Part shown: positions 29,868-55,061 of the stretch, piece after piece
Position numbering within the stretch: the stretch's first letter is position 1
Layout: every line of letters begins with the position of its first letter
IMG/VR virus record: IMGVR_UViG_3300024239_000011
Coordinates: 124,001 to 188,000 of that record
Length of the DNA stretch: 64,000 nt
Strand: one strand, 5' to 3'
Notes under the pieces: generated by a model
What the model saw: the letters and a program-made list of their open reading frames with translations, nothing else
What the model was told of the DNA's origin: nothing
Databases searched by the model: none
Position numbers and translations under genes: made by a program

Positions 29868-29944
29868 TGGTCGGAGTGGGCGGTTTCGAACCGCCGATCT
29901 CATGCGCCCCATGCATGCGCGTTAGACCACTACGCTACACCCCG
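29868..29944 (-). tRNA. tRNA-Pro(GGG)
   Basis: Cloverleaf, CCA. Confidence 0.93.
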
Positions 29945-29952
29945 TTGAAGAT

Positions 29953-30029
29953 TGGTAGGAACGGCGGGGGTCGAACCCGCAGCATCACTGGTTCTACGCC
30001 AATGTGGTCTACCGATTGCCTACGTTCCC
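29953..30029 (-). tRNA. Atypical short-arm tRNA with Leu(TAG) anticodon and G33
   Basis: Loop CGTAGAA, no variable arm, CCA. Confidence 0.75.
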
Positions 30030-30386
30030 ATATGTGTTAAACTAATCCGATGCGATTTCTACGACGACCCACCCACAACACGTTCACACGAATGCTTCAA
30101 TCGGCTACGTTCGGAACCGTGAAGGGGTTGACTCATCCAGATGGCGTGTTCCTATGGGATGCCTATTATGCCGACCATTCTACGGCGGACGGGCACCTAG
30201 GGATTGATTTGATAGCTGGATACGCCGACGAAACGGTGGCACCATTCATCATCACCCATGAATTCGATGGGGTAATTAGCATTGACGATCTATCGGTCAT
30301 CCCACGGCTTCCGTTTCTGTCGAAATATCAGATCATCACCGCAGAAGAAATTTGACGCCAGACCGACTCATAGGCACATTACGCAT

Positions 30387-30585
30387 ACCGCTCGTTTTGC
30401 CGGGTGGGGAAGGTACTTGCGATGTGGCTGTATTCCTAGGGTGAGAGCAAGCGTCTGACTAAGGGTAGTTCGGGAAGCGATTCAGTAATGGTCAATTGCC
30501 GCCACGTCGTCCCTAATTTGGGTTATCATTACCCGTAAATTACCCATCTTGCTCATGAAACCCCCGGCAATTGCCGGGGGTTTCA
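30387..30585 (+). ncRNA. Candidate pseudoknotted ncRNA of about 200 nt
   Basis: TTGACG-17-CACATT promoter, nested helices, 10-bp loop pseudoknot, terminator. Confidence 0.55.
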
Positions 30586-30590
30586 TTTGT

Positions 30591-30735
30591 ATTGACCAGT
30601 TAAGGTGCCGTGATTTGCGTTTTCACGCCTGATCCAATTCAGGTGGCTTTACCATTCGCCCACTTCCCGGTAAATGGTCGGGAAGGGAGGATTCGAACCT
30701 CCAATTTGCTGTAATCACAACGAGTTCTGGTCAAT
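30591..30735 (-). ncRNA. YrlA-like Y RNA (circularly permuted tRNA-like domain)
   Basis: TTGACCAG/CTGGTCAA terminal helix enclosing T arm, loop-closed acceptor stem, D arm and anticodon-like arm. Confidence 0.7.
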
Positions 30736-30777
30736 TCTGATAGATGACATTTATCATTTCGTATGGTACAATGCGTC

Positions 30778-31260
30778 ATGCTTGTTACGATCTTCGCGGA
30801 CGCATCTTTCTGTCCGAAAACTTTCGCTGCTGGTTGGGCAGCCTGGATAAAATCCGAACGCGGCACTTATCGGGGTGATGGCGCGATGAAAACCATTGTC
30901 CCGGACAACAACCTTGCTGAACTGTATGCCGTGATTAATGCAATCAAGCTGGCATTCGTTTCGGAAGTGGCAGTAGCCGGGGATACGCTGTTGGTGGAAG
31001 CAGATAATCATCGTGCCTTGGCGATCCTAGCAAACCGAGGAAAGAACCTCACTATCCTCGAAAAGAAAGCCGCTACACTACTCAACGGATTGCGCTCAAC
31101 GTATGACTTCACCATCAAACCTAGACACGTAAAGGCGCACTGCGGGACTGCGGTACCGCGCACGTGGGTCCATGATGATTGTGACAAACGCGCTAAGGCA
31201 CGAATGCAAGAAGCGCGTGAGAAATTGGTGCCCCCGACCGGATTCGAACCGGTACCTTGA
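30778..31260 (+). CDS. RNase H-like protein
   Basis: IFADAS, NNLAELYA, EADN, RHVKAH, CDKRAK. Confidence 0.85.
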   Translation: MLVTIFADASFCPKTFAAGWAAWIKSERGTYRGDGAMKTIVPDNNLAELYAVINAIKLAFVSEVAVAGDTLLVEADNHRALAILANRGKNLTILEKKAATLLNGLRSTYDFTIKPRHVKAHCGTAVPRTWVHDDCDKRAKARMQEAREKLVPPTGFEPVP

Positions 31261-31303
31261 CGGGATTTAAAGCCGTTGCCACTGCCAATTGCGCTACGGG
31301 GGC
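31226..31303 (-). tRNA. Atypical short-arm tRNA-Leu(TAA)
   Basis: Cloverleaf, loop TTTAAAT, C31-C39 mismatch, no long variable arm. Confidence 0.75.
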
Positions 31304-31756
31304 GAAAAACTAAATAGAGTCATGAACTACGACATCAACTCCGGTATTGGTAATTGGATGAAGAAGCGCGAGACGCACCTTCACAATCACTTTGGCGATC
31401 AATGGCGCAATACCCTTTGTCGCCGGGTCCACCAGAGCTTGAAGCAAGGCATCCGGACAAGAAACGCATTTCGGCAGCGTGTTCTTAAGGCGCTTTTGCA
31501 GCACCTTAAAGGAAGATGACAACAAGCATCCCATCCGCTATATTGGATGGATTGGAGTTTGTGTCATGCTTAAGAAACATCGCGAATACCTGAAGATTGC
31601 AGAACCGATACTCAAGGAAGCGCACATTCCAGTGATAACCTGTAATGGAGGTCGTCACGTTGCGCTGATGATAAATGGGCATCGGGTTCCCATGTCCGGG
31701 TCATCCCCGGATAAATTCGCCGCTGATCTTCGTAGGATCATCCAACGCGGCAGGAA

Positions 31757-31830
31757 TGAGGGGAAGTAGAGGCATCGAACCTCGCACCTTGCGGTGCCCC
31801 TGTGCCGCTCACCAATACGGTAGCCCTTCC
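31757..31830 (-). pseudogene. tRNA-Ser-like remnant lacking the anticodon arm and CCA
   Basis: 5' end resembles tRNA-Ser(GGA) at 33829; keeps the variable and T arms. Confidence 0.55.
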
Positions 31831-31836
31831 ATGAAA

Positions 31837-31913
31837 TGGTTCCGGGGAGAGGATTCGAACCTCAAACTTTCCTGATTCAAAGTCAGGCGGCCAGACCAAC
31901 CAGCTACCCCGGA
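31837..31913 (-). tRNA. tRNA-Gln(TTG)
   Basis: U1-A72, loop CTTTGAA, CCA. Confidence 0.9.
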
Positions 31914-31919
31914 TTAAAA

Positions 31920-31994
31920 TGGTCGGAGTGACAGGATTTGAACCTGCGACCTCATGCGCCCCATGCATGCGCGCTTCCACTGCGCTACACCCCG
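31920..31994 (-). tRNA. tRNA-Pro(GGG)
   Basis: Cloverleaf, CCA. Confidence 0.93.
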
Positions 31995-31998
31995 TTAA

Positions 31999-32655
31999 TC
32001 ACCAAATCAAATCCTCGACAAAATTCATACCGGATTTCAACCCATTCTTTGGTGGATTGTATCTAACCGTGAATGTGGTTTTTCCCAGGCAACTATCTGG
32101 AAGTCTTATTACTTTGTCTATTAACGGCAAATACACCAAAATAAGATCAATTTCTGCCGCAGAATACGTCAAAACTTTTCCATTTCCATGATCAGACACA
32201 AGGTTGATTACTATACTTCCCTGTGCTTTATCAGATTTTCCGTTTGCGTATTTTACCTGAACTCGCTTTAGTTTCTCGCCATCGTCAAGCACAAAATCAT
32301 AACGAACATCGGTAGTTGGCTTACTCAATACATACCCAAGTTCAGCAGCACGTATTTGGATTTTCAACGCCGCAATTTCACCACGCAAATTAGTGGTAAG
32401 GTTTTCATGCAACGCCTTATGCTCGATCAAACCATATTGTTCGCATCGACGCTGAAAATCATCTGCATTTTTCTTATTCACCGCACGAGCATTTTCTTGC
32501 AAACGAGATTTTAGAATTTCAGCCTGCAATGGATAATCGCGAAGCCAATAACTTGCTGTGCTTTTCGACACATTCAGTTCGGCGGATATTTCTGCCAGTG
32601 ATTTATTCTGTTTACGTAATTCTATTGCTTTTTCTCGTTCCGTTATTTTTGTCAT
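31999..32655 (-). CDS. HTH plus PD-(D/E)XK homing endonuclease
   Basis: RGEIA...RYDFVLD...RVQVK. Confidence 0.85.
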   Translation of the reverse strand: MTKITEREKAIELRKQNKSLAEISAELNVSKSTASYWLRDYPLQAEILKSRLQENARAVNKKNADDFQRRCEQYGLIEHKALHENLTTNLRGEIAALKIQIRAAELGYVLSKPTTDVRYDFVLDDGEKLKRVQVKYANGKSDKAQGSIVINLVSDHGNGKVLTYSAAEIDLILVYLPLIDKVIRLPDSCLGKTTFTVRYNPPKNGLKSGMNFVEDLIW

Positions 32656-32723
32656 TTTCGAACCCTTGACCTATTACTGGTTATATTTAGGTCAAGGGTT
32701 CGAAAATTATATCGGATGTTATT

Positions 32724-32817
32724 TGGCGGAAGACGGAGGTCTTGATCCCCAACCGCAGGGTCACTGCGATCACACTCCTTAGCAGGGAGGTCTAGGCACT
32801 CGCCTAGTTCATCTTCC
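32724..32817 (-). tRNA. 8/4 tRNA-Ser(GCT) with Sec-like 6-bp D stem
   Basis: 8-bp acceptor, 4-bp T stem, G73, long variable arm. Confidence 0.85.
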
Positions 32818-32822
32818 AAAAA

Positions 32823-32908
32823 TGGTTCCGGGAGTAGGAGTCGAACCTACACAGGGCGTTCGCCCCCGCATTCAAAGTGCGGTGTCCTACCAATTAGACG
32901 ATCCCGGA
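32823..32908 (-). tRNA. tRNA-Gln(TTG) with a long variable arm
   Basis: GGGCG-AA-CGCCC variable hairpin; U1-A72, A73. Confidence 0.85.
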
Positions 32909-32913
32909 TCAAT

Positions 32914-33000
32914 TGGCGGAAAGCGGGGTACTCGAAACCCAGACCACGAGGGTCCACATCGCTTAGCAGGCGAGTCCGTGCCCTGCACGGTTCACTTTCC
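32914..33000 (-). tRNA. 8/4 tRNA-Ser(GCT)
   Basis: 8-bp acceptor, 4-bp T stem, 6-bp D stem, G73. Confidence 0.85.
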
Positions 33001-33085
33001 ATGTGAATTGAGTGGTCTGCTGCGCACCGTTCTTCTGTTCGGCGTCTTTGCACATGGGCGCGACCCATGACAGCAGAAATTGTGG

Positions 33086-33710
33086 CTATTTCAGCGCCAA
33101 TCGCAGCCGATCAACACCGATAGCCCAACCAATACCTTCAGCGTAGCGTCCGCCACCAGCAACCTGTTTCTGGGCACCAAGCGAGGAAACCTCCACCTCG
33201 AACCCATCTTCGACGTAGTACGTCAGCCCACGTTTCACCGATTCCACGAAGGTGTATTCGACCGGCAACGCATCGAGGCATCGCCGCAACAACTCCGTGA
33301 CTTCTTCCGTGTCCGCTGGACCAGACCCGCCGAGCAGTTCGACCCCAAACTGAGTGAACTCGCGGTACCTTCCCGCTTGGGGGCGCTCGTAGCGATAGCA
33401 CCGGTTACAATAGAACAGGCGCATCGGCTTTTTAGGCTTGATCTTGCTCCATTGGTCCCGATATAGCTCCTGAACCAAGCCAGTCACTTCCGGGATCAAA
33501 CAGACTGGGCGATTGCCCTTATCGTTGAAAGCCCACATCTGGTTTACGATCTCGGGACCAGCCTTATCGATGAAGGTTTGCTGTTCCCAGATTTCCGGAA
33601 GAATTACTTCCTCGAAACCAGCTTCAGTGAACTACCCTCCGAACAGTATCGATGATCATGCGGTATTGACGAGCGTCATCGCCCATCAGGACTTGTGTGC
33701 CTCGCAACAT
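33086..33710 (-). CDS. Minimal histidyl-tRNA synthetase catalytic core, split by a +1 frameshift near 33630
   Basis: MLRGT...RRVV in frame 0 joins TEAGFEEVILP...YRYERPQAGRYREFTQFGVE...RGLTYY...AGGGRY...GWAIGVDRL in the +1 frame. Confidence 0.85.
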
Positions 33711-33735
33711 TGTCTTGCCTTTCGTTTGCGTAGTT

Positions 33736-33812
33736 TGGGGTGGCTGACGGGGTACGATCCCGCAACCTTCGCAGTCACAGTGCGACGCTCTACCAATTGA
33801 GCTACAGCCACC
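33736..33812 (-). tRNA. tRNA-His(GTG) with encoded G-1:C73
   Basis: Cloverleaf, loop CTGTGAC. Confidence 0.93.
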
Positions 33813-33828
33813 ACAGAAATTAAAGAAT

Positions 33829-33921
33829 TGGCGGAAGGGAAGGGACTCGAACCCCCAAACCCCCTTGCGGAGATCAAACACCTTTCCAAGGTGCGCTGTT
33901 CGCCAGTACAGTAGCCCTTCC
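33829..33921 (-). tRNA. tRNA-Ser(GGA)
   Basis: 7/5 cloverleaf, long variable arm, G73. Confidence 0.92.
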
Positions 33922-33946
33922 ATGGTAACTATTGTTACCATTTAAT

Positions 33947-34023
33947 TGGTCGGTGTGGAGGGACTTGAACCCCCATGATAACCTGTCCCCGAGACAGGTG
34001 GCTTACCATTGGCCCACACACCG
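33947..34023 (-). tRNA. tRNA-Pro(CGG)
   Basis: Cloverleaf, CCA. Confidence 0.9.
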
Positions 34024-34025
34024 GT

Positions 34026-34116
34026 TGGCGGAAATTGATGGCATCGAACCATTGACCCTACTTAGGTGTCACCATCGTTTTCAAGACGATTTAGGGAGCC
34101 AACCCTGGCAATTTCC
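34026..34116 (-). tRNA. 8/4 tRNA-Ser(TGA)
   Basis: GGAAATTG/CAATTTCC acceptor, ATGG/CCAT T stem. Confidence 0.88.
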
Positions 34117-34172
34117 ATTGAAGTTGGTGCGGCGGACAGAGATCGACCCTGCACTACCAAATTCCAACAGTA

Positions 34173-34251
34173 TGGTCGGCGCGGCGAGATTCGAACTCGC
34201 GATCTCGTGTTCCCGAAACACGCGGGGACGACCAGACTCCCCTACGCACCG
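34173..34251 (-). tRNA. tRNA-Pro(CGG)
   Basis: Cloverleaf, CCA. Confidence 0.9.
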
Positions 34252-34344
34252 TTACCTGTTGACAAGGCACCACGAGGTGCCTACACGTTGAAAATCTCGG
34301 CACCAGGGCTTCGGCGCCCTTATTTGGTGGGAAGTCCCATGAAA

Positions 34345-34411
34345 TGGTGCGGTCGAGGGGACTTGCCATGCGTGTCTGAGACGCACCTGTATACCATTCC
34401 AGCACGACCGC
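34345..34411 (-). pseudogene. tRNA-Leu(CAG) with variable arm and part of the T arm deleted
   Basis: Intact acceptor, D and anticodon arms; 67 nt; CCA. Confidence 0.7.
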
Positions 34412-34840
34412 GATTGACTTAATGAATTACTTGGTGTATAGTATTGGTTCAACGGGAGAGCAGCCCATGAACCCGAAAGAACGCGAACAAGCATTGTGCG
34501 CTTTGTACAGCAAGTACAAGGACGAACCGCTGAAGGCGCTCGAAGAGTTCTTCGAAATCAGTTCGCACGATTGGCTGCTCAACTATCGCCACGAAGGCGA
34601 ATGTCTCGATCCCCACATTTACACGTGGGTCGAATTCGAAGCGTTGAACGACCCCCGCATCTATGGCAGCTTCAAGGTGATTTCTAAATCGTCCCTGGTG
34701 GGAAGAAAGTTCGAAATCCGTTGGCATTGGGACGGCGGTCTTCCGAACATGTTGTTGCCCGTGATCCGCTTCACCGATGTCTGGTTCCTGCCACGAGAAA
34801 TGAAGTACGTGCAGCGAGAGGCAGCATAGTTTATAGATGG

Positions 34841-34927
34841 TGGTGCGGCTGACTGGACTCGAACCAGCACGGGAAATTCTTCCCCAGGCTTCTCAGACCT
34901 GTGTGTATACCATTCCACCACAGCCGC
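34841..34927 (-). tRNA. tRNA-Leu(GAG)
   Basis: Cloverleaf with long variable arm. Confidence 0.93.
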
Positions 34928-35104
34928 ATTGTTCTATTCGCGTTCGTCGCGGTAATTCCGATACGCCGCGAAGATGGTGTCCTCACCAAGGTCAGTGATT
35001 TCCGGTGAAACCTTCTCGACATCAAGTGAAGCGACCACGATCACTACCTTCCCTTCCGGGGTAAGGTACGCTTTGTCTTGAACCAACATGTTGAAATCCA
35101 AAAA

Positions 35105-35323
35105 TGGTGGAGGCGAGGGGATTCGAACCCCCGTAGACCGCATAGACCCAAGCATTACCAAGGGCTGGACTTAGGTTTAGAACTTTGGGTGCCCGCTGAC
35201 AGCTTTCGGAAGCCAGAAGGTCGGTCCAAACGAACCCCAAATCCACTTGCGCATGCGTCCCGGTTTTACCCGAGCCGTTGTTCTGTTCCACGGTGCCTAT
35301 GCCGAACTCAGGCGGACGCCCCC
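35105..35323 (-). ncRNA. Short tmRNA-like RNA (219 nt)
   Basis: GGGGGCG/CGCCTCC-ACCA acceptor with G3-U70, T arm, GCATAGGC/GTCTATGC helix, no D stem. Confidence 0.7.
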
Positions 35324-35377
35324 AAATGTTTGACCCATACAAGGATCAGGCAGTTTTGACCCTTGTGGGTCAAAAAT

Positions 35378-35462
35378 TGGTTCCGGGTGATGGACTCGAA
35401 CCACCACAAGGTTTTCACCCACGCATTCAGAGTGCGTTGACCTACCATTAGTCGAACCCGGA
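35378..35462 (-). tRNA. tRNA-Gln(CTG) with a long variable arm
   Basis: GGGT-GAAA-ACCT variable hairpin; U1-A72, A73. Confidence 0.85.
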
Positions 35463-35526
35463 TCAAAGCAAAAGGGCGTGGACCTTATGATCCACGCCCT
35501 CTGCCAAGGGAAACCTGTGTTGTTGA

Positions 35527-35940
35527 TTACCGGCGCCGAGCGCCATACGACCGATGCGGCACCATGTCGTGCTGGTCATAATAATTATTGGGGTTATCGT
35601 AAAACTCATCGCGCTGGGCGCCGTTATCTTGCTGTTGATAGGCGCGAACCCCGTACTCACGCTGCTGTTGCTGCTGCATATACATACAGTCCGCCCGATC
35701 CAGCGACGAACCGACTTCGTTACCGGCGGCGGCACCCAGCAGAGTACCGATGGCAGTCATCGCCAGATTACCGTTGCCCTTACCGAACTGAGCGCCAGCG
35801 ACAGCACCACCAACACCACCCAGAACGGCACCACCGGTCTGCTTGTTAAAACCGAAACCACCGCCGCACGAATTGGCGGGCGATTGAGCGCAGGCGCTCA
35901 GAGCGATGGTGGCGGCGATGGCAAGAAGAATGCGGCGCAT
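35527..35940 (-). CDS. Glycine-zipper lipoprotein (rickettsial 17-kDa antigen-like)
   Basis: LSAC lipobox; KQTGGAVLGGVGGAVAGAQFGKG...SLDRAD. Confidence 0.85.
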   Translation of the reverse strand: MRRILLAIAATIALSACAQSPANSCGGGFGFNKQTGGAVLGGVGGAVAGAQFGKGNGNLAMTAIGTLLGAAAGNEVGSSLDRADCMYMQQQQQREYGVRAYQQQDNGAQRDEFYDNPNNYYDQHDMVPHRSYGARRR

Positions 35941-36023
35941 GGTGACCTCCCTCAAAATCATGAATACAGTATATCTACTGCAATCCAAGATGTCAAGGGA
36001 GGGCCAAGAAGTTTTTCTTGCTA

Positions 36024-36566
36024 CTACTTCACGCCGCACCAGTCGAGCCAGAAATCACCGATGAAATTGCGTTCACCGGGCTGCGTCGAAGGAATATCCA
36101 CTTCGATCCGCTGCCGACAGGACAGTACCTTGCCGGTATTAGGATGGTCGTCGCATCTCCCATACACCTTTGTGATGTAGGCGACCCGACCATCCTTCAG
36201 CGCAAACGCTTCACCAACCTTTGGATTGGCGCCGGGGGCGTCGAAGAGGATCATCGTGGCATCGTCGCTAATACACGCAAGATAAATCGTGCGCGAACGA
36301 AAAACCGCTTCCGAATTCTTGCCTTGCGGTACGAACACCATGTCCTTGCGATCATCGGCGCGATCCATCCCAGTGACGAACCCAGTCACCGTTTTTCCCT
36401 TCACTGAAACCCGTCCGGGATGGGTGAAGAATGTGTCCGGTTCACGAGTAACCCGTACCGTGCGACGAACCCCATCGGGGCAAAGTACATTGGAATACTT
36501 GGTGGTAATGTAGAAGTGACCAACGGTTACGGCTTCCGCTACCACATCATAAGCATTGGGGCGCAT
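36024..36566 (-). CDS. Hypothetical protein
   Basis: GGAGG RBS, 180 aa. Confidence 0.6.
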   Translation of the reverse strand: MRPNAYDVVAEAVTVGHFYITTKYSNVLCPDGVRRTVRVTREPDTFFTHPGRVSVKGKTVTGFVTGMDRADDRKDMVFVPQGKNSEAVFRSRTIYLACISDDATMILFDAPGANPKVGEAFALKDGRVAYITKVYGRCDDHPNTGKVLSCRQRIEVDIPSTQPGERNFIGDFWLDWCGVK

Positions 36567-36624
36567 GAACAGCCTCCGAGCTAGAGAGAAACACCACCCT
36601 AGCGAGTTATCTGCGCCTCGTCAA

Positions 36625-36701
36625 TGGTGGGAACGGTCGGACTCGAACCGACAGCATCTTTCTTTTTGAGAGAAAGTGGTCTACCAATTGCCTACGTTCC
36701 C
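36625..36701 (-). tRNA. Atypical short-arm tRNA-Leu(CAA)
   Basis: 6-bp anticodon stem, no variable arm, CCA. Confidence 0.8.
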
Positions 36702-36845
36702 ATAATTCCGAGCCAATGATCACGGCGGCGGCTCATCTTCCACCAGTTCACGCCTTTCCAGAGTCACCCACACCATTGAACAACTGCCTAGGATAGTTGA
36801 ACATTGGCTTAATGGCAGATTGGAGTTTGCTGAACGATCTCACCT

Positions 36846-36922
36846 TGGTCGGGGATGTGAGAATCGAACTCACTTGATATCCTGCTCCCAAAGCAGGCGG
36901 CTCGCCTTTAGCCCAATCCCCG
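36846..36922 (-). tRNA. tRNA-Pro(TGG)
   Basis: Cloverleaf, CCA. Confidence 0.9.
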
Positions 36923-37318
36923 TTGATTAAAGAATTCTGAGATCACTTGACGGATATTCATGAGGGTCTTGTGCGATCCCAATAATGGATTCCGAGCGAA
37001 CAGTGATCGTTTCTGGGTAGACATTGCAATCAAGCTCTACGTCAAACACAGGGTCACGATCTTTGAACAGACCGAAGAACCGGGTCACCACGACGGAACG
37101 GATACCGACGACCTTGCCGATCCTTCCGCCGTTAAGTTCAACCATAGTTCCGATGCTGATATTTTCTTGCTTCATGCAAGTATTTACGGGGGTTTCCCGA
37201 AGATAATCAGCGGTGTTTGACGCCCCATCCATTCATTTTCACAACCAGCCCCACTCACCCGCTGTTGTGATCTTGCGGCACATTTTCGCAAATGCTCACC
37301 CCGCATCTTGCCGTATAT

Positions 37319-37395
37319 TGGTCCGGGTGGTGAGAATCGAACTCACTTGATGTCCTGTTCCCAAAACAGGCGGCTCGCCTTTAGCCCACACCCGG
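37319..37395 (-). tRNA. tRNA-Pro(TGG)
   Basis: Paralog of the 36846 copy. Confidence 0.9.
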
Positions 37396-37422
37396 TAATA
37401 CTTCGTCGCGTATCCATTGATT

Positions 37423-37505
37423 TGGTGGGCGGGTGCGGTTACGATCCACTCCCCGAAGGATAGGTTTTACAGACCTACTGCTAGAGCCACTAGCTTTACC
37501 CGCCC
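37423..37505 (-). tRNA. 8/4 tRNA-Tyr(GTA)
   Basis: GGGCGGGT/ACCCGCCC acceptor, GTGG/CCGC T stem. Confidence 0.82.
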
Positions 37506-37571
37506 GGTGTCTTGACAAATGTCTAGTATACTAGACATAAAGTCGGTTACTGTTGGCTATAACTAACATTA

Positions 37572-37648
37572 TGGTGGGAACGGCGGGAGTCGAACCCGCA
37601 GCATCACATATGCTGAGTATGTGTGGTCTACCAGTTGCCTACGTTCCC
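37572..37648 (-). tRNA. Atypical short-arm tRNA-Leu(CAG)
   Basis: Same body as the 36625 copy, loop CTCAGCA. Confidence 0.8.
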
Positions 37649-37655
37649 TGAAATT

Positions 37656-37739
37656 TGGTGGACAGGGAGGGAATTTGCACCCCCACAGCTTTCGCGTCGC
37701 GTTTACAGCGCGGTGAACTCACTCGTGTTCAGCCTGTCC
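37656..37739 (-). tRNA. Atypical tRNA-Tyr(GTA) with an 8-nt T loop
   Basis: Loop CTGTAAA; T loop TGCAAATT. Confidence 0.75.
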
Positions 37740-37740
37740 A

Positions 37741-37831
37741 TGGCGGAATGTGATAGCATCGAACTATTGACCCTGCTTAGGTGTCACCACGGCTTTCGAA
37801 ACCGATTAGGGAGCCAACCCTGGCACATTCC
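37741..37831 (-). tRNA. 8/4 tRNA-Ser(CGA)
   Basis: Paralog of the 34026 copy. Confidence 0.88.
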
Positions 37832-37845
37832 AAATATTTTATAAA

Positions 37846-37936
37846 TGGCGGAAAGTGATGGCATCGAACCATTGACCCTACTTAGGTGTCACCACAATTT
37901 AGCAAATTGCTTAGGGAGCCAACCCCGGCACTCTCC
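37846..37936 (-). tRNA. 8/4 tRNA-Ser(GCT)
   Basis: Paralog of the 34026 copy. Confidence 0.88.
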
Positions 37937-37937
37937 A

Positions 37938-38014
37938 TGGTGGGGACAGCGGGACTCGAACCCGCAGCATCACTGGTTCTTAGCCAATGTGGTCTACCAA
38001 TTGCCTATATCCCC
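37938..38014 (-). tRNA. Atypical short-arm tRNA-Leu(AAG)
   Basis: Loop CTAAGAA, A34, no variable arm. Confidence 0.8.
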
Positions 38015-38024
38015 GTCTTAAGTT

Positions 38025-38103
38025 TGGGGTGATGAGCCGGATTCGAACCGCGCACCTTCGCTTTCACAGAGCGATATGCAGACACCGCCACACCATCATC
38101 ACC
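38025..38103 (-). tRNA. tRNA-His(GTG) with G-1:C73 and a bulged T stem
   Basis: Loop CTGTGAA, CCA. Confidence 0.82.
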
Positions 38104-38247
38104 ATAAAACTTTGTTGATGCGCATTTATTCGCGCATCCTATCTAGAAAAATTTCCCCTTTTTCGGCACTGTACCAAGGATTCAAACCTCAGTTACCCCA
38201 ATCGCCAGGACTGGTGATGCTTCAATCTCTCTAAGATGCCAAGGGGA

Positions 38248-38388
38248 TTTGACCAGTTAAGGTGTTGTGATTTGCGTTTTCACGCCTGATCCCAATTCAG
38301 GTGGCTTTACCATTCGCCCATATTCCAATGCTGGAATAGTCGGATTCGAACCGACAATTTGCTGTAATCACAACGAGTTCTGGTCAAA
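38248..38388 (-). ncRNA. YrlA-like Y RNA, second copy
   Basis: Near-identical frame to the 30591 copy; acceptor stem closed by a GCAT loop. Confidence 0.7.
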
Positions 38389-38391
38389 ACT

Positions 38392-38482
38392 TGGTAGGCA
38401 GGGAGGGATTCGAACCCCCTTGTTTACCCTAAGGGGCTGGATTTACAGTCCAGTGCTACACCACCGTCGTAGCCGCCTGCCC
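38392..38482 (-). tRNA. tRNA-Tyr(GTA)
   Basis: CTGGA-CTGTAAA-TCCAG arm, variable arm, CCA. Confidence 0.9.
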
Positions 38483-38712
38483 ATATTCAGTCGTCAATGC
38501 ATGTCTGGACGATCTCCCAATCATAGGAGTTCAGGTCCGATTTTGACTGAAGTTTCTGTTTGTAGTAGGACACCATTCCGCTCGGACACCCAAGCGTCTT
38601 CACGATGTCGTTGCTCGGCACGCCTTTCTTAATCAGGCGCACGATTTCCTCTTGAAAGGTCATAACTGCATCCTTGCTGCATTGCAACAATATTTAGGAT
38701 GCGAAGAAAATT

Positions 38713-38786
38713 TGGCTGGGGAAGTAGGACTCGAACCCACATGAACGCAGTCAGAGTGCGTCATCCTGCCATTAGATGATTCCCCA
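38713..38786 (-). tRNA. tRNA-Gln(CTG)
   Basis: Canonical cloverleaf, U1-A72, G73. Confidence 0.93.
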
Positions 38787-38825
38787 AAACTAAATAAACA
38801 ATCACTAAAAGCGAGGGAGAGATTT

Positions 38826-38918
38826 ATGGCGACTGCTATCATCATCAGCAAGTACATCTGGATAGCCAGCGCAATTGCGTTTGGTACTTTCATCGCGTAT
38901 CGCAGGTTTCGCCGCTAA
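38826..38918 (+). CDS. 30-aa single-TM peptide with a basic tail (not in the ORF track)
   Basis: TAAATA at 38791, GGGAG RBS, MATAIIISKYIWIASAIAFGTFIAYRRFRR. Confidence 0.6.
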   Translation: MATAIIISKYIWIASAIAFGTFIAYRRFRR

Positions 38919-39424
38919 CGCATGATTGCATTTTACGGGACAACCTGATATAGTCTCGGTTCAAAATGCCGGGTTGCGGTCCTGAAATCTCACCTCCTGA
39001 ACCGCAACCCGCCGTACCGTTGAGGGGAAGCATGGCAGTGCTTTCCCCGGCGGGCGTTATTGATGCGCCACTACCCGCTAGGCGGTGCAACAATCTTTCG
39101 ATCATCACACATTCTCTAGAACGCCGGAAACCAGGGGGTGGGCTACCACCATCGCTGTGAGTTACGTGCCCTTACACGCTCTCACTCCCTACCAGTCGTC
39201 CCAGCCGTACCTCTCGGATTGGCTGAAATTCGGTTTGAAGCAACAACCGCCGCTTCGATGCCCTAATGACTACACCGCATTTTTCGGTTCGTCAATTCTT
39301 TTTTGCGTTCGTTTGTATTTTTATTTTCGAACGCTGGGTAAATACTTTTCAATAATTACCCAATACTTCCCCGTTGTGAAGCATTACTTCTCGCTTCACT
39401 TACGGGTTTGAACCCCAGATAAAC

Positions 39425-42593: not shown

Positions 42594-43286
42594 TTAATCT
42601 ACATACCGGGCGGGGAATACCTTCGCCCACTTATCCGGGTCGTAAAATTCCCCCGCAATGGATGCCTCGAACATTTCCATCCGAACCTTCAGCATTTCTG
42701 CTGTCGGCATCGGCGGAAATAACGAGATCGGTTTGAGATCGGTCCATTTAGCCCGTCCACGCCCTTGGCGGCATGAAACCGCATATTCGTTCGTCCCATC
42801 CCGACGTTGGATGCGGTTGATCTGATAGATGGTCGTAAACGGGTTGTCTTCTGGCTCAAAAGAGAACAATTTTGACTCGACAACCTTCCGGAGGCTTTCA
42901 GGCATCAGGAGGACACTACCCGCCACATTTTCCCAATACTCACCCACCGGGGAGATCACGCACAAATGTTGCTTCTTGAACCAGTAGGACCGTGCCTTGG
43001 CTTGGGAAGCTGGATCATTCTTCTTGAACATCGCGGCGACAATGTTCTGAACGTGGTCATTTTCAAACCCGTAAGTCCGCAAACTCGGGATCGCTACTCG
43101 CACATCACGCTTTTCGATGTCTTTGAAAGGTAGATCGAAAAACATGTATTGTTGCCAGATTTCCGCATTGGAGAACTGCCGAATAGTGAACTCCATGTTT
43201 TCACCTTCCGGAAACTCCGCGAGACGAATCAGCCACTCGAAAGTGGATGGATCATAGGGGTTTGGGGAGTTGATCCATGTTTTCAT
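42594..43286 (-). CDS. Hypothetical protein coupled to aspS
   Basis: 4-nt overlap with the aspS stop. Confidence 0.65.
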   Translation of the reverse strand: MKTWINSPNPYDPSTFEWLIRLAEFPEGENMEFTIRQFSNAEIWQQYMFFDLPFKDIEKRDVRVAIPSLRTYGFENDHVQNIVAAMFKKNDPASQAKARSYWFKKQHLCVISPVGEYWENVAGSVLLMPESLRKVVESKLFSFEPEDNPFTTIYQINRIQRRDGTNEYAVSCRQGRGRAKWTDLKPISLFPPMPTAEMLKVRMEMFEASIAGEFYDPDKWAKVFPARYVD

Positions 43287-45151
43287 TTCGCGGTCACCTT
43301 GATGTGAAGTTCCTTCAACTGTTCCGGGGTGACTTCAGAGGGTGCGCCCATCATCAAGTCCTGCGCCGAGTTGTTCATCGGGAACGCCACGATCTCGCGG
43401 ATGTTCGGCTCATTCGCCAACAACATCACCATGCGGTCGATACCAGGGGCGATACCACCGTGCGGTGGTGCGCCGTAGCGGAAAGCATTGTAGAGCGCCG
43501 GGAATTTAGTCTGAACCACTGCCGGGTCATACCCAGCAATCTCAAACGCCTTCTCCATCACGTCGATGCGGTGGTTACGGATGGCGCCCGACGACAGTTC
43601 CACGCCGTTGCACACCAAGTCGTATTGATGTGCTTTGATGGTCAGCGGGTCTTGGTTCAACAACGCATCCATCCCACCCTGCGGCATCGAGAACGGGTTG
43701 TGGCTGAATTCGACCTTGCCCGTTTCCTCGTTCAATTCGAACATGGGGAAATCCACGATCCAGCAGAACTGGAAGGATTCCTCATCGTAGTTGTCCGACC
43801 GCTTGGCAGCTTCGACACGCAGCTTGCTTGCCCACTGATACGCCTCTTTCTTCGGACCAGCAATGAACATATATGATGCATCCGGTTTTTCAAATTGAGC
43901 GCATGTAGTTTCATCCATGAAATCCACGGCGATGGACCACATCTGCTCGTCGGTGAAAAACTTTTCCATCGGACCAGAAACGCCGGTCAGCACATGCGGC
44001 TCCGTGCGCGCGTGCGACAACGATTCTTTCCAATCTGTGATCTTGAAGTAGCCAAGACCGGGCATACCCAAATCCTTGGCATAGTTATCCATGTCCTTGT
44101 GCCATTTACCCGTCAGCTTTCCAGCGTCGGCATATACCGGGATGCACAACACAACACCGTTCTTATCGATGACTTCCTGAAGGAACGGTGGCGCATTCGG
44201 TGCAACAACCTCCGTAACATCACGGATATAGATGTTGTCGTCCACACGCAGATCGGGTTTGTCGTTACCAAACAATTGGATAGAAGCATCATAGGTGTAG
44301 GTTCGCCATTCCGGGTTGACGTACCAGTTGGATGTGGGTCCGCAATAACTGACTGAGGTGAATTCCTCGAACACCCGCGATACTACATCCTTGACAACGC
44401 CGAACACCTCTTCTTGGGTAGCAAATGCCATTTCCATGTCAAGCTGGTAGAACTCACCCGGCGACCGGTCAGAACGCCCAGCTTCATCGCGGAAGCACGG
44501 GGCAATCTGAAAGTACCGCTGCACCCCTGAACACATCAGAATTTGCTTGAAAATCTGCGGAGCCTGGGGCAGCGCGTAGAATTTACCGGGATGCAAACGG
44601 GCAGGCACCAAATAATCACGGGCGCCTTCCGGACTAGAAGCCGTCAGAATGGGCGTCTGAATTTCCATGAAGTCCTGGCGTACCATTTCGTTGCGCAGCA
44701 TCCAAATCACGTCGGAACGCAGTTTGAGGTTCTGCTGCATTTTCGGGCGGCGAAGATCGAGGTACCGATACCGCAGGCGAGCTTCGTCCGATGCAGTGAA
44801 ATCTTCATCGTGCAGCGTGAACGGAAGTACCGCCGCCTGATTGAAGATTTCAAACTCTTCCACGACCAGTTCATATTTGCCAACGAACCCGAGTTTTTCG
44901 TTGGTAGTGCCTTCCGGGCGCAGACGCGGCGTTCCGCGAACTTCCACACAGCTTTCTTCACGAATCTTTGCCAGGGCGGCAATGTTCGGGTTGTTGGCAT
45001 CAAGCGCACACTGCATTACGCCATCGTAGTCACGGATGTCCACGAACAACAACCCGCCGTGGTCGCGCACTCGGTGAACCCAACCGCGTAAGGCAACCTT
45101 CTGTCCAACTGAACATGAACCGGGTGAACCAATCGGATAGACGATGTACAT
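43283..45151 (-). CDS. aspS: Aspartyl-tRNA synthetase, probably non-discriminating
   Basis: RDHGG, RLRYRYLDLRR, YALPQAPQ, QIAPCFRDE, GAPPHGGIAPGIDR. Confidence 0.96.
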   Translation of the reverse strand: MYIVYPIGSPGSCSVGQKVALRGWVHRVRDHGGLLFVDIRDYDGVMQCALDANNPNIAALAKIREESCVEVRGTPRLRPEGTTNEKLGFVGKYELVVEEFEIFNQAAVLPFTLHDEDFTASDEARLRYRYLDLRRPKMQQNLKLRSDVIWMLRNEMVRQDFMEIQTPILTASSPEGARDYLVPARLHPGKFYALPQAPQIFKQILMCSGVQRYFQIAPCFRDEAGRSDRSPGEFYQLDMEMAFATQEEVFGVVKDVVSRVFEEFTSVSYCGPTSNWYVNPEWRTYTYDASIQLFGNDKPDLRVDDNIYIRDVTEVVAPNAPPFLQEVIDKNGVVLCIPVYADAGKLTGKWHKDMDNYAKDLGMPGLGYFKITDWKESLSHARTEPHVLTGVSGPMEKFFTDEQMWSIAVDFMDETTCAQFEKPDASYMFIAGPKKEAYQWASKLRVEAAKRSDNYDEESFQFCWIVDFPMFELNEETGKVEFSHNPFSMPQGGMDALLNQDPLTIKAHQYDLVCNGVELSSGAIRNHRIDVMEKAFEIAGYDPAVVQTKFPALYNAFRYGAPPHGGIAPGIDRMVMLLANEPNIREIVAFPMNNSAQDLMMGAPSEVTPEQLKELHIKVTAK

Positions 45152-50133: not shown

Positions 50134-50287
50134 TGCTATTCGCCATTATGATCCTTTAAAATTAGCCGCATCGCTGGGAGCATGCATTGAATATTCAATG
50201 CTCAAACGCGGCTTTGTTGTTGTTAATTGCCAGTAAACCGCATTTGTGCTAAATAGGTATATACAGAGTATATACCGAGGTCGATCC

Positions 50288-54900: not shown

Positions 54901-55061
54901 TTTGCGTCTAGCGTTCCGGGAGCGATGCCCGTGCCGCTCGGATGTACCTTGTTACTATGAGTGGCGATGAATAGGCACGGAACAGTACCACGGTCGGCAC
55001 CAGCATAGGCGCTTTCGTCCGTAATTGTTACGCTCACACCGGGTGAAGACAAATCTGGCAT
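51933..55061 (-). CDS. Tail sheath protein
   Basis: LSSPGVSVTITDES N-terminus; WFAPAG.NRG, GQKT, DRINVARL, FEPND, VCDETNN, IQPVKAIEFIYI. Confidence 0.96.
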   Translation of the reverse strand: MPDLSSPGVSVTITDESAYAGADRGTVPCLFIATHSNKVHPSGTGIAPGTLDAKANKLYLMTSQREAIQTFGDPMFYTSGGTPLHGYELNEYGLHALYQYLGINDRAYVVRADIDLGQLVPSAVAPRGNPVHGTYWLDLGMTSVGVFESNGNNNPGLAWDFKQVKLIDSEAVSHRVIVGTSSVAITNHASQSVLSSSGVLTINGVSINLNSGDTLLSIVSKINNAHIDNIKASMYANAAVVGNGGNTTLPNKVKGIEYNLKISNTRGKDIFITGDATIISQLGFTGKHDVFLPASDIGKNGDYAIITFLNDNRIYQKLIPQDASGISTNTPDVGAHWYLVGSPEWKAATPTIVISKVVTSAFNAGWLEIASSTGNRKIVVDAGDTVNEIYFKINNDAALTADGIIAQSTGTQLIITNVYGEDITFTSQSGNVLDVLAIDATTYLGNKLSYSTHAVVPKPSAVGDVWIKTTKPNKGANWVVKYYNSQIGQWMTQNAPLYASDADALTNLGSSLAAGTVYVQYDTSVDGTASHTIRRWNGMNWEDLMYEGSVGEPTSEPANGALWFNNNLRVDIMVSNGSQWFGYRNRYPGTDIMLSGSEPRYKPNGSAIIENDLWIDTADLENYPKIYKYMGGSWEVVDNTDQTTPFGIVFADARQDDGSGNEDYNSMLISNFVDIDAPDALSYPDGLILFNTRYSTNNVKKWVVNYNFEGRLVGNRWVTVSGNDIDGSPFMGRKAQRIMIVRAIAESIVNNEDLRSEQVYFNLLAAPGYAEVIDELVTLNVDKKQWAFIVADTPARMKPNATEVQNWAQNTNLAGSNGEKGLTTANPYVGLYYPWGLSTNIDGREVMVPPSTIALRTMAYNDTVAYQWFAPAGYNRGLVTNATTTGYLTSEEEFKPVLLNQGQRDVLYLNKINPIAFIPNRGLIVYGQKTLNPTSTAMDRINVARLTNYLRYQLEMLAKPFLFEPNDLQTRDSVRITFERFLADLVGLRALYDFVVVCDETNNSGERIDRNELWIDVAIQPVKAIEFIYIPIRILNTGEDMG

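What the first reader, a model, noticed from the sequence alone, without database searches (positions are those of the whole stretch)
29953..38014. Family of Leu-anticodon tRNAs without a variable arm
Seen: one shared body (GGGAACGTAGGCAA..., bulged D stem, 6-bp anticodon stem) carrying TAG (with G33), CAA, CAG and AAG at 29953, 36625, 37572 and 37938, plus a different short TAA tRNA at 31226. Normal long-arm Leu tRNAs coexist. Known: bacterial tRNA-Leu is class II, and A34 Leu is rare. Inference: a parallel nuclease-resistant Leu set, or missense tRNAs charged with another amino acid.
Basis: partly seen in the sequence, partly recalled or inferred. Interest (0 to 1): 0.7.

Follow-up and report, generated by a model that had tools for sequence, protein, structure and literature searches.

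The report
Short-armed leucine tRNAs in huge phage
A 543-kb phage carries five leucine-anticodon tRNAs that lack the long extra arm of textbook bacterial leucine tRNAs; they belong to two conserved families also found in other phages, in mobile tRNA clusters and (one family) in nearly all actinomycete chromosomes sampled, so they are most likely ordinary leucine carriers, not miscoding tRNAs.

Summary
All five short tRNAs with Leu anticodons are at the stated coordinates on the minus strand, encode CCA and pass Rfam's tRNA threshold. They lie in a 21-tRNA island of a 543-kb myovirus-like phage that has no LeuRS gene.

Four of them (CAA, CAG, AAG, UAG) form "family 1". It has an invariant D arm and AUGCU variable loop and a covarying sixth anticodon-stem pair. 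I found 29 further members in other phages and in sporadic planctomycete tRNA clusters; all 33 carry Leu anticodons and A73.

The fifth (UAA) belongs to "family 2". This family was hit in 140 of 151 sampled actinomycete genomes. In one complete chromosome it is the only decoder of UUA/UUG, so it is a genuine tRNALeu. S. coelicolor type I tRNALeu(CAA) is the biochemical precedent.

CAA, CAG and AAG match the phage's three commonest Leu codons exactly. Best reading: a parallel set of type I Leu acceptors charged by host LeuRS.

- Missense charging is very unlikely.
- Nuclease evasion is plausible but untested.
- The UAG copy (G33) may be impaired.
- Expression is not shown.

Family 1 is a new variant of a known kind. 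In passing: two permuted, YrlA-like tRNA mimics, and long-armed Gln, Lys, Cys and Asn tRNAs.

The parts
36625..36701 (-). Family-1 short (type I) tRNA-Leu, anticodon CAA, 77 nt with CCA
   Evidence: ARAGORN. Rfam tRNA 49.2 bits. Family-1 model R1 91.0 bits. Exact match to TTG, which is 24% of phage Leu codons.
37572..37648 (-). Family-1 short tRNA-Leu, anticodon CAG; the only CAG Leu tRNA in the phage
   Evidence: 42.5 bits; 91.1 bits. CTG is 23% of Leu codons. No strain variants inside it, although several lie just downstream.
37938..38014 (-). Family-1 short tRNA-Leu, anticodon AAG (A34); acceptor stem differs from its paralogues by compensated changes
   Evidence: 46.8 bits; 91.9 bits. CTT is 23% of Leu codons. 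No TadA-like tRNA deaminase was found; the only deaminase is dCMP/dCTP-type.
29953..30029 (-). Family-1 short tRNA-Leu, anticodon UAG, with G33 instead of U33 and G1.U72; possibly impaired copy
   Evidence: 35.3 bits, the lowest; 87.9 bits. G33 is unique among 33 members, whereas G1.U72 is common (11/33).
31226..31303 (-). Family-2 short tRNA-Leu, anticodon UAA (actinomycete type: 3-bp D stem, 11-nt D loop); divergent member with G12.G23 and C31.C39 mismatches
   Evidence: 44.3 bits; R2 80 bits; the next phage tRNA scores 58. The same ACGGC/CCCGT anticodon stem with the C.C mismatch occurs in L141.
29868..38786 (-). tRNA island holding the short Leu tRNAs: 21 tRNA genes in 8.9 kb (Leu, Pro, Gln, His, Ser, Tyr), all on the minus strand and all with encoded CCA
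   Evidence: It is part of 66 tRNAs in the 543-kb genome, nearly all between 77.5 and 172.5 kb.
34841..34927 (-). Ordinary long-arm (type II) tRNA-Leu(GAG) inside the same island. Four more lie upstream in the window: 7582-7663 taa, 8872-8958 gag, 12708-12793 tag, 12822-12905 caa

Best explanation
The five genes encode functional type I (short variable loop) leucine tRNAs. They arose from tRNALeu by loss of the long variable arm. They keep the features that bacterial LeuRS uses: A73, U8-A14, a possible A15-U48 pair, G18G19, a T loop with U54-A58, and a 5-nt variable loop.

Because LeuRS does not read the anticodon, the body could be duplicated in the phage and re-targeted to several Leu codons. 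In infected cells they would be cut out of the tRNA island transcripts, charged with leucine by the host LeuRS (the phage has none), and used to read the phage's own Leu codons. They work beside a long-arm Leu set.

Shown: the tRNA structure, family conservation and covariation, restriction to Leu anticodons, the core role of family 2 in actinomycetes, and the codon match. Inferred: charging with Leu, expression, and use in translation.
For: (1) Structure. Cloverleaf with 98.4% paired cells; 17 of 21 pairs show double changes; covariation is 0.735 against 0.165 in shuffles. The AAG paralogue has compensated acceptor changes.

(2) Family 1 elsewhere. Further members occur in 7 viral contigs, in Microbacterium phage Zooman (its relatives Big4 and Cece match the same query and are annotated tRNA-Leu, but I did not read their sequences), in an Agromyces provirus and in 12 Planctomycetota contigs. 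All 33 aligned members have Leu anticodons (cag, tag, caa, gag, taa, aag) and A73. The D arm and AUGCU loop are invariant while the helices vary.

(3) Both codon boxes. The anticodons span the UUR and CUN boxes, which only leucine links. No anticodon-reading synthetase would accept them all. This rests on established knowledge of aaRS identity rules and on PMC6614811.

(4) Family 2, which includes the window's UAA tRNA. There are 77 short tRNAs in 80 viral contigs, 75 of them with Leu anticodons. It was hit in 140 of 151 sampled actinomycete genomes (137 of 148 without three unpublished ones). Twenty fetched hits are all 74-77-nt tRNA-Leu. In the complete chromosome G276 the long Leu tRNAs are only gag, cag and tag, so the short UAA and CAA tRNAs are the sole UUR decoders.

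(5) Biochemical precedent. S. coelicolor type I tRNALeu(CAA) is leucylated by its LeuRS and could not be deleted (PMC6614811).

(6) Codon match. CAA, CAG and AAG are Watson-Crick matches of TTG (24%), CTG (23%) and CTT (23%), the phage's three commonest Leu codons.

(7) Strain conservation. DNA strains show about 40 variant sites in 36000-39000, and none falls inside the three family-1 tRNAs there.

(8) D arm. The family-1 D arm is closest to long tRNALeu D arms among 341 tRNAs compared.

(9) No LeuRS in the phage.
Against: - No direct evidence of transcription, processing or charging. RNA libraries hold only depth 2-4 pieces of a relative, over tRNA and non-tRNA parts alike.
- E. coli LeuRS did not charge the S. 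coelicolor type I tRNALeu, so function depends on an unknown host. The host was not resolved.
- Family 1 has a weak, non-canonical D stem and an extra anticodon-stem pair, and its effect on LeuRS and on the ribosome is untested.
- Family 1 is never the sole decoder in any cellular genome examined. G001 has a full long-arm set.
- The UAG copy has G33, and the UAA copy has two helix mismatches.
Confidence: 0.8

Rival explanations
1. Same Leu identity, but the arm-less form exists because it escapes host tRNA-directed defences (or the phage's own host-shutoff tRNase) that recognise long-arm or type II Leu tRNAs. The phage would then keep translating Leu codons when the host's (and its own) long-arm tRNALeu are cut. 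This is a refinement of the best explanation, not an exclusive alternative.
For: - A complete second Leu set is maintained beside a long-arm set.
- Family 1 is confined to phages and sporadic mobile tRNA clusters: 4 of 151 Planctomycetota genomes and 1 of 151 Actinomycetes genomes, the latter in a provirus.
- Short Leu tRNAs outnumber long ones 54 to 11 in the fetched phage and array loci, although that sample is biased.
- The phage encodes RtcB, an RNA repair ligase.
- Literature: phage tRNAs evade anticodon nucleases (PMC10264068); VapC52 cuts the variable loop of tRNASer (PMC13273310); bacterial Schlafen tRNases defend against phages, and that paper's reference list cites work whose title states that human SLFN11 cleaves type II tRNAs (PMC13056530).
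Against: - No nuclease specific for long-arm tRNALeu is known in bacteria.
- Nothing in the window links the tRNAs to a defence system.
- Family 2 is simply the native form in actinomycetes, so arm loss needs no defence rationale.
- The phage also keeps five long-arm Leu tRNAs.
Confidence: 0.2
2. Missense tRNAs: the short body is charged with an amino acid other than Leu (by a host enzyme or by one of the phage's own synthetases, such as its editing-domain-less ValRS) and recodes Leu codons.
For: - The body lacks the hallmark long arm.
- The phage encodes unusual synthetases: a 517-aa ValRS without a CP1 editing domain, plus IleRS, MetRS, AspRS and a HisRS fragment.
- The phage has many oddly built tRNAs.
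- Natural missense tRNAs exist elsewhere, for example nev-tRNAs (PMC3333845, listed).
Against: - Every family member has a Leu anticodon: 33 of 33 and 75 of 77.
- Family 2 is the only UUR decoder in a standard-code actinomycete.
- The three good copies read 70% of Leu codons, about 5.5% of all codons, so miscoding would rewrite the whole proteome.
- There is no G3:U70 and no Ser-type long arm, and the anticodons fit no anticodon-reading synthetase. A36 or G36 excludes Val; the lack of G34 excludes Phe.
Confidence: 0.03
3. Decaying or unexpressed gene copies: duplicated tRNA relics in a recombination-prone tRNA island, with no role in translation.
For: - The UAG copy has G33 and the lowest Rfam score.
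- The UAA copy has D-stem and 31-39 mismatches.
- No promoter or terminator signal above chance.
- Transcription is not shown.
- Homing-endonuclease-like genes sit in the island.
Against: - Compensatory changes between paralogues and across 33 and 32 homologues.
- The core is invariant over distant phages.
- CCA is retained.
- No polymorphism inside the tRNAs among strains.
- The C31.C39 mismatch of the UAA copy is shared with a tRNA of another phage.

This rival is plausible only for the UAG copy, at perhaps 0.3-0.4 for that copy alone.
Confidence: 0.07

Closest known systems
Type I tRNALeu(CAA) of Streptomyces coelicolor (Fan et al. 2019, NAR, PMC6614811)
   Same: A bacterial Leu tRNA with a 5-nt variable loop that coexists with long-arm Leu tRNAs and a single LeuRS. 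It is charged with Leu, and U8-A14 and loop length matter. The window's UAA tRNA is of the actinomycete family hit in 140 of 151 actinomycete genomes.
   Different: Family 1 (four of the five genes) has a different D arm (GGC AAyyGGUAG ACC, with a C.A mismatch or a bulge), an AUGCU loop rather than ACAGC, and a covarying sixth anticodon-stem pair. It scores only 47-55 bits on the family-2 model. It is phage- or array-borne, not chromosomal core. I could not retrieve the S. coelicolor sequence itself to align it.
Chromosomal short tRNALeu(UAA/CAA) of class Actinomycetes ('family 2', defined here)
   Same: Same architecture and near-identical D arm and variable loop as window 31226-31303. It is a genuine Leu decoder, the sole UUR decoder in G276.
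   Different: The window's copy has C12>G and A22>U in an otherwise invariant D arm, and it sits in a phage. The four family-1 genes are a separate lineage.
tRNA array units of prokaryotes (Tran et al. 2016, PMC4758250) and phage tRNA islands
   Same: At least 20 tRNA genes at 2 or more per kb, giving redundant isoacceptors. Tran et al. report a higher gene diversity index for tRNA-Leu(AAG) in array-bearing organisms and mention arrays in Planctomycetes. Family 1 sits in such arrays.
   Different: In the passages I searched, that survey did not mention tRNA structure or short-arm Leu tRNAs. Here the array is interspersed with phage genes.
Animal mitochondrial tRNALeu (type I)
   Same: A Leu tRNA without a long arm, with A73.
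   Different: A different lineage with its own mitochondrial LeuRS. ScoLeuRS does not charge the human mitochondrial tRNALeu(UUR).
Missense or unusual class II tRNAs (nev-tRNAs, PMC3333845; allo-tRNAs, from my own knowledge of Mukai et al. 2017)
   Same: tRNAs whose body class and anticodon appear mismatched.
   Different: Those are long-arm bodies with non-Leu, non-Ser anticodons. Here a short body always carries Leu anticodons, which argues for ordinary identity.
Nuclease-evading phage tRNAs (van den Berg et al. 2023, PMC10264068)
   Same: Phage-borne duplicates of host tRNA functions that may survive tRNA-directed defence.
   Different: The evasion described there works through anticodon-loop substitutions. 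Here the difference is whole-arm architecture, and evasion is untested.

Membership tests
tRNA (Rfam RF00005) | Cloverleaf scoring at or above the 29-bit gathering score | tested here: met
   35.3-49.2 bits for all five genes. ARAGORN calls all five.
Type I (short variable loop) bacterial tRNALeu | Variable region of about 5 nt, with no stem-loop | tested here: met
   AUGCU in family 1. The window's UAA tRNA has 6 nt (CAAGGU) against 5 nt in most of family 2.
Type I (short variable loop) bacterial tRNALeu | Leu anticodon together with A73, U8-A14 and G18G19 | tested here: met
   All present in the five genes, and conserved in 33 and 32 homologues.
Type I (short variable loop) bacterial tRNALeu | Aminoacylated with leucine by LeuRS | not testable with these tools
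   Only indirect evidence: restriction to Leu anticodons, the sole-decoder role of family 2 in G276, and the S. coelicolor biochemistry (PMC6614811).
Actinomycete short tRNALeu sequence family ('family 2', model R2) | R2 score in the range of chromosomal members (about 82-99 bits) | tested here: met
   For 31226-31303 only: 80 bits, against 58 for the next phage tRNA.
Actinomycete short tRNALeu sequence family ('family 2', model R2) | The same criterion applied to the four family-1 genes | tested here: not met
   46.7-54.8 bits, within the range of unrelated tRNAs. They form their own family: R1 scores 88-92 bits against 47 or less for all other tRNAs.
Class II (long-arm) bacterial tRNALeu | Long variable arm with a stem-loop (more than 10 nt) | tested here: not met
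   Absent in all five genes; present in five other Leu tRNAs of the window.
tRNA array unit (Tran et al. 2016) | At least 20 tRNA genes at 2 or more genes per kb | tested here: met
   21 tRNA genes in 29868-38786, or 2.35 per kb. Definition taken from the PMC4758250 abstract.
Missense / allo-tRNA-like tRNAs | Anticodons that do not match the identity of the body and are scattered over codon boxes | tested here: not met
   Leu anticodons in 33 of 33 and 75 of 77 members.
Nuclease-evading phage tRNA | Demonstrated resistance to a host tRNase that cuts the host counterpart | not testable with these tools
   Literature context only, plus the phage RtcB gene.

The most novel reading that the evidence does not exclude
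Family 1 is a mobile Leu-decoding kit specific to phages and tRNA arrays. Its missing variable arm, non-canonical D stem and 6-bp anticodon stem would make it invisible to tRNases (or toxins) that recognise long-arm type II tRNAs. It would then act as a counter-defence that keeps all six Leu codons readable when host tRNALeu is destroyed.
Probability: 0.15. Interest if true: 0.7.

Novelty: new variant of a known kind. Interest (0 to 1): 0.4.

Why it matters
Textbooks, and the one biochemical paper on the topic, treat arm-less bacterial tRNALeu as a rarity. The scans done here do not agree.

- One arm-less family was hit in 140 of 151 sampled actinomycete genomes and is common in phages.
- A second, structurally distinct family travels with phages and mobile tRNA clusters, as multi-anticodon Leu sets.

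For this window the practical consequence is correct annotation. These are Leu tRNAs, and no recoding should be assumed when translating the phage's genes.

More broadly, the invariant D-arm and variable-loop core of family 1 is a ready-made natural experiment on how LeuRS recognises tRNA without the long arm. It is also a possible host-range marker, since E. coli LeuRS did not charge the one type I tRNALeu tested. If the arm-less form also escapes tRNA-directed defences, it would add a new architectural route of phage counter-defence.

Tried and rejected
- **BLAST of the window's CAA tRNA against cultured phages** gave nothing at E 1e-3. A planctomycete member at E 10 did find relatives.
- **Mycobacteriophage Gaia.** Its tRNA-Leu-CAA is reported to be required for lysogeny (tRNA-dependent lysogeny, PMC10865867), so I checked it as possible in-vivo proof. 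Gaia's only long tRNA is 83 nt and is presumably that tRNA-Leu-CAA; I did not read its anticodon. It is therefore not informative.
- **Expression.** Two run searches and two read layings found the phage in subsurface and soil DNA runs. RNA libraries from wastewater held only depth 2-4 pieces of a relative, over tRNA and non-tRNA stretches alike. Transcription is neither shown nor excluded.
- **Promoter and terminator scan:** not above shuffled expectation.
- **Host inference from the phage AspRS.** It is about 40-50% identical to both Actinomycetes and Planctomycetota, so there is no discrimination. DNA similarity gave only a 218-bp, 78% match to Brevundimonas jumbo phages.
- **Sole-decoder idea for family 1.** I considered that family 1 might be the core CUN decoder of Planctomycetota. 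This is rejected: 4 of 151 genomes have it, and G001 has a full long-arm set.
- **A34-to-I34 editing by a phage TadA.** The only deaminase is dCMP/dCTP-type.
- **Alternative register for the G33 copy** (anticodon AGA): rejected because it breaks the conserved stem.
- **Literature.** Ten full-text searches found no description of short-arm Leu tRNAs in phages or tRNA arrays. Absence from that library is not proof.
- **Permuted elements as Y RNAs.** There is no Ro60/TROVE gene in the phage and no Rfam hit, so membership remains open.

Full report
**Context.** The window is bases 124001-188000 of a single 543,035-bp IMG/VR virus record, rated 100% complete by CheckV. It has 48.7% G+C, a tail-sheath gene (51933-55112) and many small ORFs. 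ARAGORN finds 66 tRNA genes in the genome, nearly all on the minus strand between 77.5 and 172.5 kb. Of these, 27 are in the window and 21 lie within 29868-38786. Every tRNA in the window encodes its CCA end. The DNA comes from subsurface and soil metagenomes, with relatives in wastewater.

**Checking the observation.** All five reported genes exist at the stated coordinates on the minus strand and pass Rfam's tRNA threshold.
- Four of them (UAG 29953-30029, CAA 36625-36701, CAG 37572-37648, AAG 37938-38014) share one body: a 7-bp acceptor stem, U8 A9, the D arm GGC-AAyyGGUAG-ACC, one A, a 6-bp anticodon stem, the 5-nt variable loop AUGCU, a normal T arm and A73-CCA.
- The UAG copy has G33 and G1.U72.
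- The AAG copy differs in the acceptor stem by compensated changes.
- The fifth gene (UAA 31226-31303) has another body.
- Five ordinary long-arm Leu tRNAs are also in the window. The phage's long-arm set is UAA, CAA, UAG and GAG x2. CAG and AAG exist only in the short form.

**Family 1.**
- *Where it occurs.* Pattern scans for the D arm found the same body in other viral contigs (L006, L007, L008, L013, L018, L020, L033). They also found it in an Agromyces chromosome, where the tRNA sequence is identical to that of viral record L018 and is probably a provirus, and in twelve Planctomycetota contigs. All other pattern hits were chance matches inside coding sequence. Among cultured phages, Microbacterium phage Zooman carries family-1 cag and gag tRNAs annotated tRNA-Leu. 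Its relatives Big4 and Cece match the same query. Mycobacteriophage Bxz2 and its relatives carry a related 74-nt tRNA-Leu(CAG).
- *Anticodons and conservation.* In an alignment of 33 members, all have Leu anticodons and 32 have the usual A73. The D arm and the AUGCU loop are invariant and the helices vary freely.
- *Covariation.* For the cloverleaf I specified, 98.4% of cells pair. Seventeen of 21 pairs show double changes. The covariation score is 0.735 against 0.165 in shuffles and at most 0.13 for slid partners. The extra anticodon-stem pair covaries (CG 28, GC 3, AU 1, UA 1). G1.U72 occurs in 11 of 33, so it is a family trait. G33 is unique to the window's UAG copy.
- *Model search.* The covariance model R1 scores the four window genes at 88-92 bits and every other tRNA of the phage at 47 or less.
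- *Distribution in cells.* In cellular genomes the family is sporadic: 4 of 151 sampled Planctomycetota (one more at 64 bits) and 1 of 151 Actinomycetes.
- *Setting in planctomycetes.* It sits in dense tRNA clusters in which the other Leu tRNAs are short too. The complete chromosome G001 has a full long-arm Leu set elsewhere. Family 1 is therefore an accessory, mobile lineage.

**Family 2 and the fifth gene.**
- *In viral contigs.* A scan with the D arm of the UAA gene found 80 viral contigs holding 77 short tRNAs. Of these, 75 have Leu anticodons: UAA 54, UAG 15, CAA 6.
- *Structure.* The alignment gives 98% pairing and covariation of 0.70 against 0.18. The 3-bp D stem and 11-nt D loop have the architecture of long-arm tRNALeu.
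- *Model search.* Model R2 scores the window's UAA gene at 80 bits, against 58 for the next phage tRNA.
- *In actinomycetes.* R2 hit 140 of 151 sampled genomes of class Actinomycetes at 82-99 bits. That tally includes three unpublished genomes (G158, G183, G194). Without them it is 137 of 148, and no sequence of theirs is used. Twenty fetched hits are all 74-77-nt tRNA-Leu: UAA, CAA and one UAG.
- *Sole decoder.* In the complete chromosome G276, with 45 tRNAs, the only long Leu tRNAs are GAG, CAG and UAG. UUA and UUG are therefore read solely by the two short tRNAs. Family 2 is thus a genuine, core tRNALeu of actinomycetes.
- *In planctomycetes.* It is sporadic there, in 13 of 101 genomes and partly in tandem.
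- *Literature.* This fits the one biochemical study. S. coelicolor type I tRNALeu(CAA) is leucylated by its single LeuRS and could not be deleted. E. coli LeuRS did not charge it. The leucine-specific domain of LeuRS decides (PMC6614811).

**What the genes most likely do.**
- *Charging.* The phage has IleRS, a 517-aa ValRS without an editing domain, MetRS, AspRS and a HisRS fragment, but no LeuRS. Charging must therefore come from the host enzyme.
- *Identity.* Bacterial LeuRS does not read the anticodon. That explains how one body could be duplicated and re-targeted within the two Leu codon boxes, repeatedly and in different phages. Acceptor stems are alike within a phage and differ between phages. 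No anticodon-reading synthetase would accept UAA, CAA, UAG, CAG, GAG and AAG together.
- *Codon use.* In 293 long ORFs the Leu codons are TTG 24%, CTG 23%, CTT 23%, CTC 13%, CTA 8% and TTA 8%. The three well-formed family-1 copies (CAA, CAG, AAG) are exact matches of the top three.
- *Strain conservation.* Related strains show about 40 variant positions in 36000-39000, and none lies inside the family-1 tRNAs there.
- *Conclusion.* I conclude, with about 0.8 confidence, that these are Leu-accepting type I tRNAs that supply the phage's translation beside a long-arm set.
- *What remains inferred.* Charging, expression and use in translation are inferred. RNA libraries gave only depth 2-4 fragments of a relative, over tRNA and non-tRNA parts alike. 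The promoter scan was at chance level.
- *Possibly weakened copies.* The UAG copy (G33, lowest score) may be impaired. The UAA copy has a G12.G23 mismatch and a C31.C39 mismatch, the latter shared with a tRNA of another phage.

**Rivals.**
- *Missense charging* is very unlikely (about 0.03), for the reasons above. It would also recode about 5.5% of all codons.
- *Relics.* The idea that the genes are relics conflicts with the compensatory changes, the invariant cores and the lack of polymorphism. It remains possible for the UAG copy alone.
In its favour: family 1 is restricted to phages and mobile arrays; a full second Leu set is kept; the phage has RtcB; and there is literature on phage tRNAs evading anticodon nucleases, on a VapC that cuts a variable loop, and on bacterial Schlafen tRNases. 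Against it: arm loss is simply the native state of family 2 in actinomycetes, and no bacterial nuclease specific for long-arm tRNALeu is known.

**Comparison with what is known, and novelty.** Short-arm tRNALeu is a known kind: animal mitochondria, and S. coelicolor. Members of both families are already annotated as tRNA-Leu in GenBank phage records. Family 1 has a non-canonical D stem, a 6-bp anticodon stem, an invariant AUGCU loop and a mobile distribution. I found no description of it in ten full-text searches. I therefore rate it a new variant of a known kind, of moderate interest. The host remains unknown; AspRS comparisons did not discriminate.

**Noticed in passing.**
- *Two permuted tRNA-like elements.* Two elements of about 145 nt lie on the minus strand, at 38388..38244 and 30736..30588. 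From 5' to 3' each has:
  - a long closing helix;
  - a T arm;
  - a 7-bp acceptor stem closed by a short loop (in one copy the loop is A-CCA-UUUAC);
  - a D arm containing GGCGAAUG;
  - an anticodon-like arm (UGG);
  - a GAAA-capped hairpin.

  The acceptor and T stems differ between the two copies by fully compensated changes. The folds have z-scores of -4.6 and -4.9. They resemble YrlA-type bacterial Y RNAs; M. smegmatis YrlA is cut by RNase P and receives CCA (PMC4201824). However, the phage has no Ro60 gene and Rfam does not recognise the elements. Similar capped-acceptor elements occur in tRNA islands of other viral contigs.
- *Long-armed tRNAs of normally short types.* The phage also has tRNAs with Gln, Lys, Cys and Asn anticodons that carry a stem-forming long variable arm, and Thr and Gly tRNAs with an enlarged variable region.

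Noticed in passing
window 38244-38388 (-) and 30588-30736 (-): Two copies of a circularly permuted tRNA-like element. From 5' to 3' each has a closing helix, a T arm, a 7-bp acceptor stem capped by a loop (GCAU in one copy, ACCAUUUAC in the other), a D arm with a GGCGAAUG motif, an anticodon-like arm (UGG), a GAAA hairpin, and the closing helix again. The acceptor and T stems differ between copies by fully compensated changes. The folds have z-scores of -4.6 and -4.9. ARAGORN and Rfam both miss them. They look like YrlA-type Y RNAs (PMC4201824), but the phage has no Ro60 gene. Copy B is followed by a strong hairpin at 30555-30586.
   Followed up: partly
L154:5674-5708 and 6061-6095; L191:1284-1321 and 3913-3949; L167:2938-2974(-); L007:8896-8939; L055:6981-7015; L137:6877-6911(-): Other viral and planctomycete tRNA islands hold elements with a T arm, then an acceptor hairpin capped by a short loop of 4-13 nt (four are tetraloops: GAAA, TTAC, CTCG, GCGA), then a D arm, enclosed by a long helix. 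No Rfam family reaches its threshold on the five of these loci that were scanned (L055 was not). This may be a widespread, unannotated class of tRNA mimics in phage tRNA islands.
   Followed up: partly
window 32823-32908 (-) and 35378-35462 (-); outside the window G000:81155-81248, 98917-99008, 99623-99712, 99969-100056, 103623-103711 (stem-forming arms); also 83237-83319, 99872-99956, 105418-105500: tRNAs with Gln (UUG, CUG), Cys, Asn and Lys anticodons carry a stem-forming long variable arm, often with a GAAA-type loop. The Thr and Gly tRNAs listed last have only an enlarged, unpaired variable region in ARAGORN's fold. This is the reverse of the Leu case. The Lys tRNAs have U73. Their identity and function are unexplained.
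   Followed up: partly
G000:85953-87029 (-) (L002:1078-2631): A phage ValRS of only 517 aa. It matches ValRS profiles at positions 1-175 and 352-695 and so lacks the CP1 editing domain and the C-terminal part. An editing-less ValRS could mischarge. It lies inside the tRNA region.
   Followed up: no
window 43283-45151 (-), 33086-33538 (-): A full bacterial-type AspRS (691 bits on the aspartate--tRNA ligase model NF001750) and a 150-aa HisRS fragment next to tRNA-His. ARAGORN finds no tRNA-Asp or tRNA-Glu in the whole phage, despite the AspRS.
   Followed up: no
window 31999-32655 (-), 50246-51874 (+): Homing-endonuclease-like genes in and near the tRNA island: HTH + PD-(D/E)XK, and NUMOD3. This recalls SegB in the T4 tRNA cluster (PMC2330249, listed).
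   Followed up: no
G000:14487-16685 (-): An RtcB RNA ligase in an 803-aa frame. The Pfam match is split into two parts about 900 nt apart, which may indicate an intein or an inserted domain.
   Followed up: no
Genomes G152-G302 (class Actinomycetes sample); G276: Short-arm tRNALeu was hit in 140 of 151 sampled actinomycete genomes and is the sole UUR decoder in a complete chromosome. The literature found here calls type I tRNALeu in bacteria rare (PMC6614811). The tally includes unpublished genomes G158, G183 and G194; it is 137 of 148 without them.
   Followed up: yes
window 37938-38014; L013:12743-12815(-); L033:7194-7267(-): A34 anticodons recur in phage tRNA islands: Leu-AAG here, Pro-AGG in L013 and His-AUG in L033. 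No TadA-like deaminase was found in this phage.
   Followed up: partly
G000:96422-96505 (-): ARAGORN calls an 84-nt tRNA with a 4-base anticodon (ctta), labelled Lys|Stop. It may be a frameshift-suppressor-like tRNA or a miscall.
   Followed up: no
window 55422-56576 (-), 1079-2125 (-): The phage carries a PHB depolymerase-like gene and an AI-2E family transporter gene. These are auxiliary metabolic or host-interaction genes.
   Followed up: no
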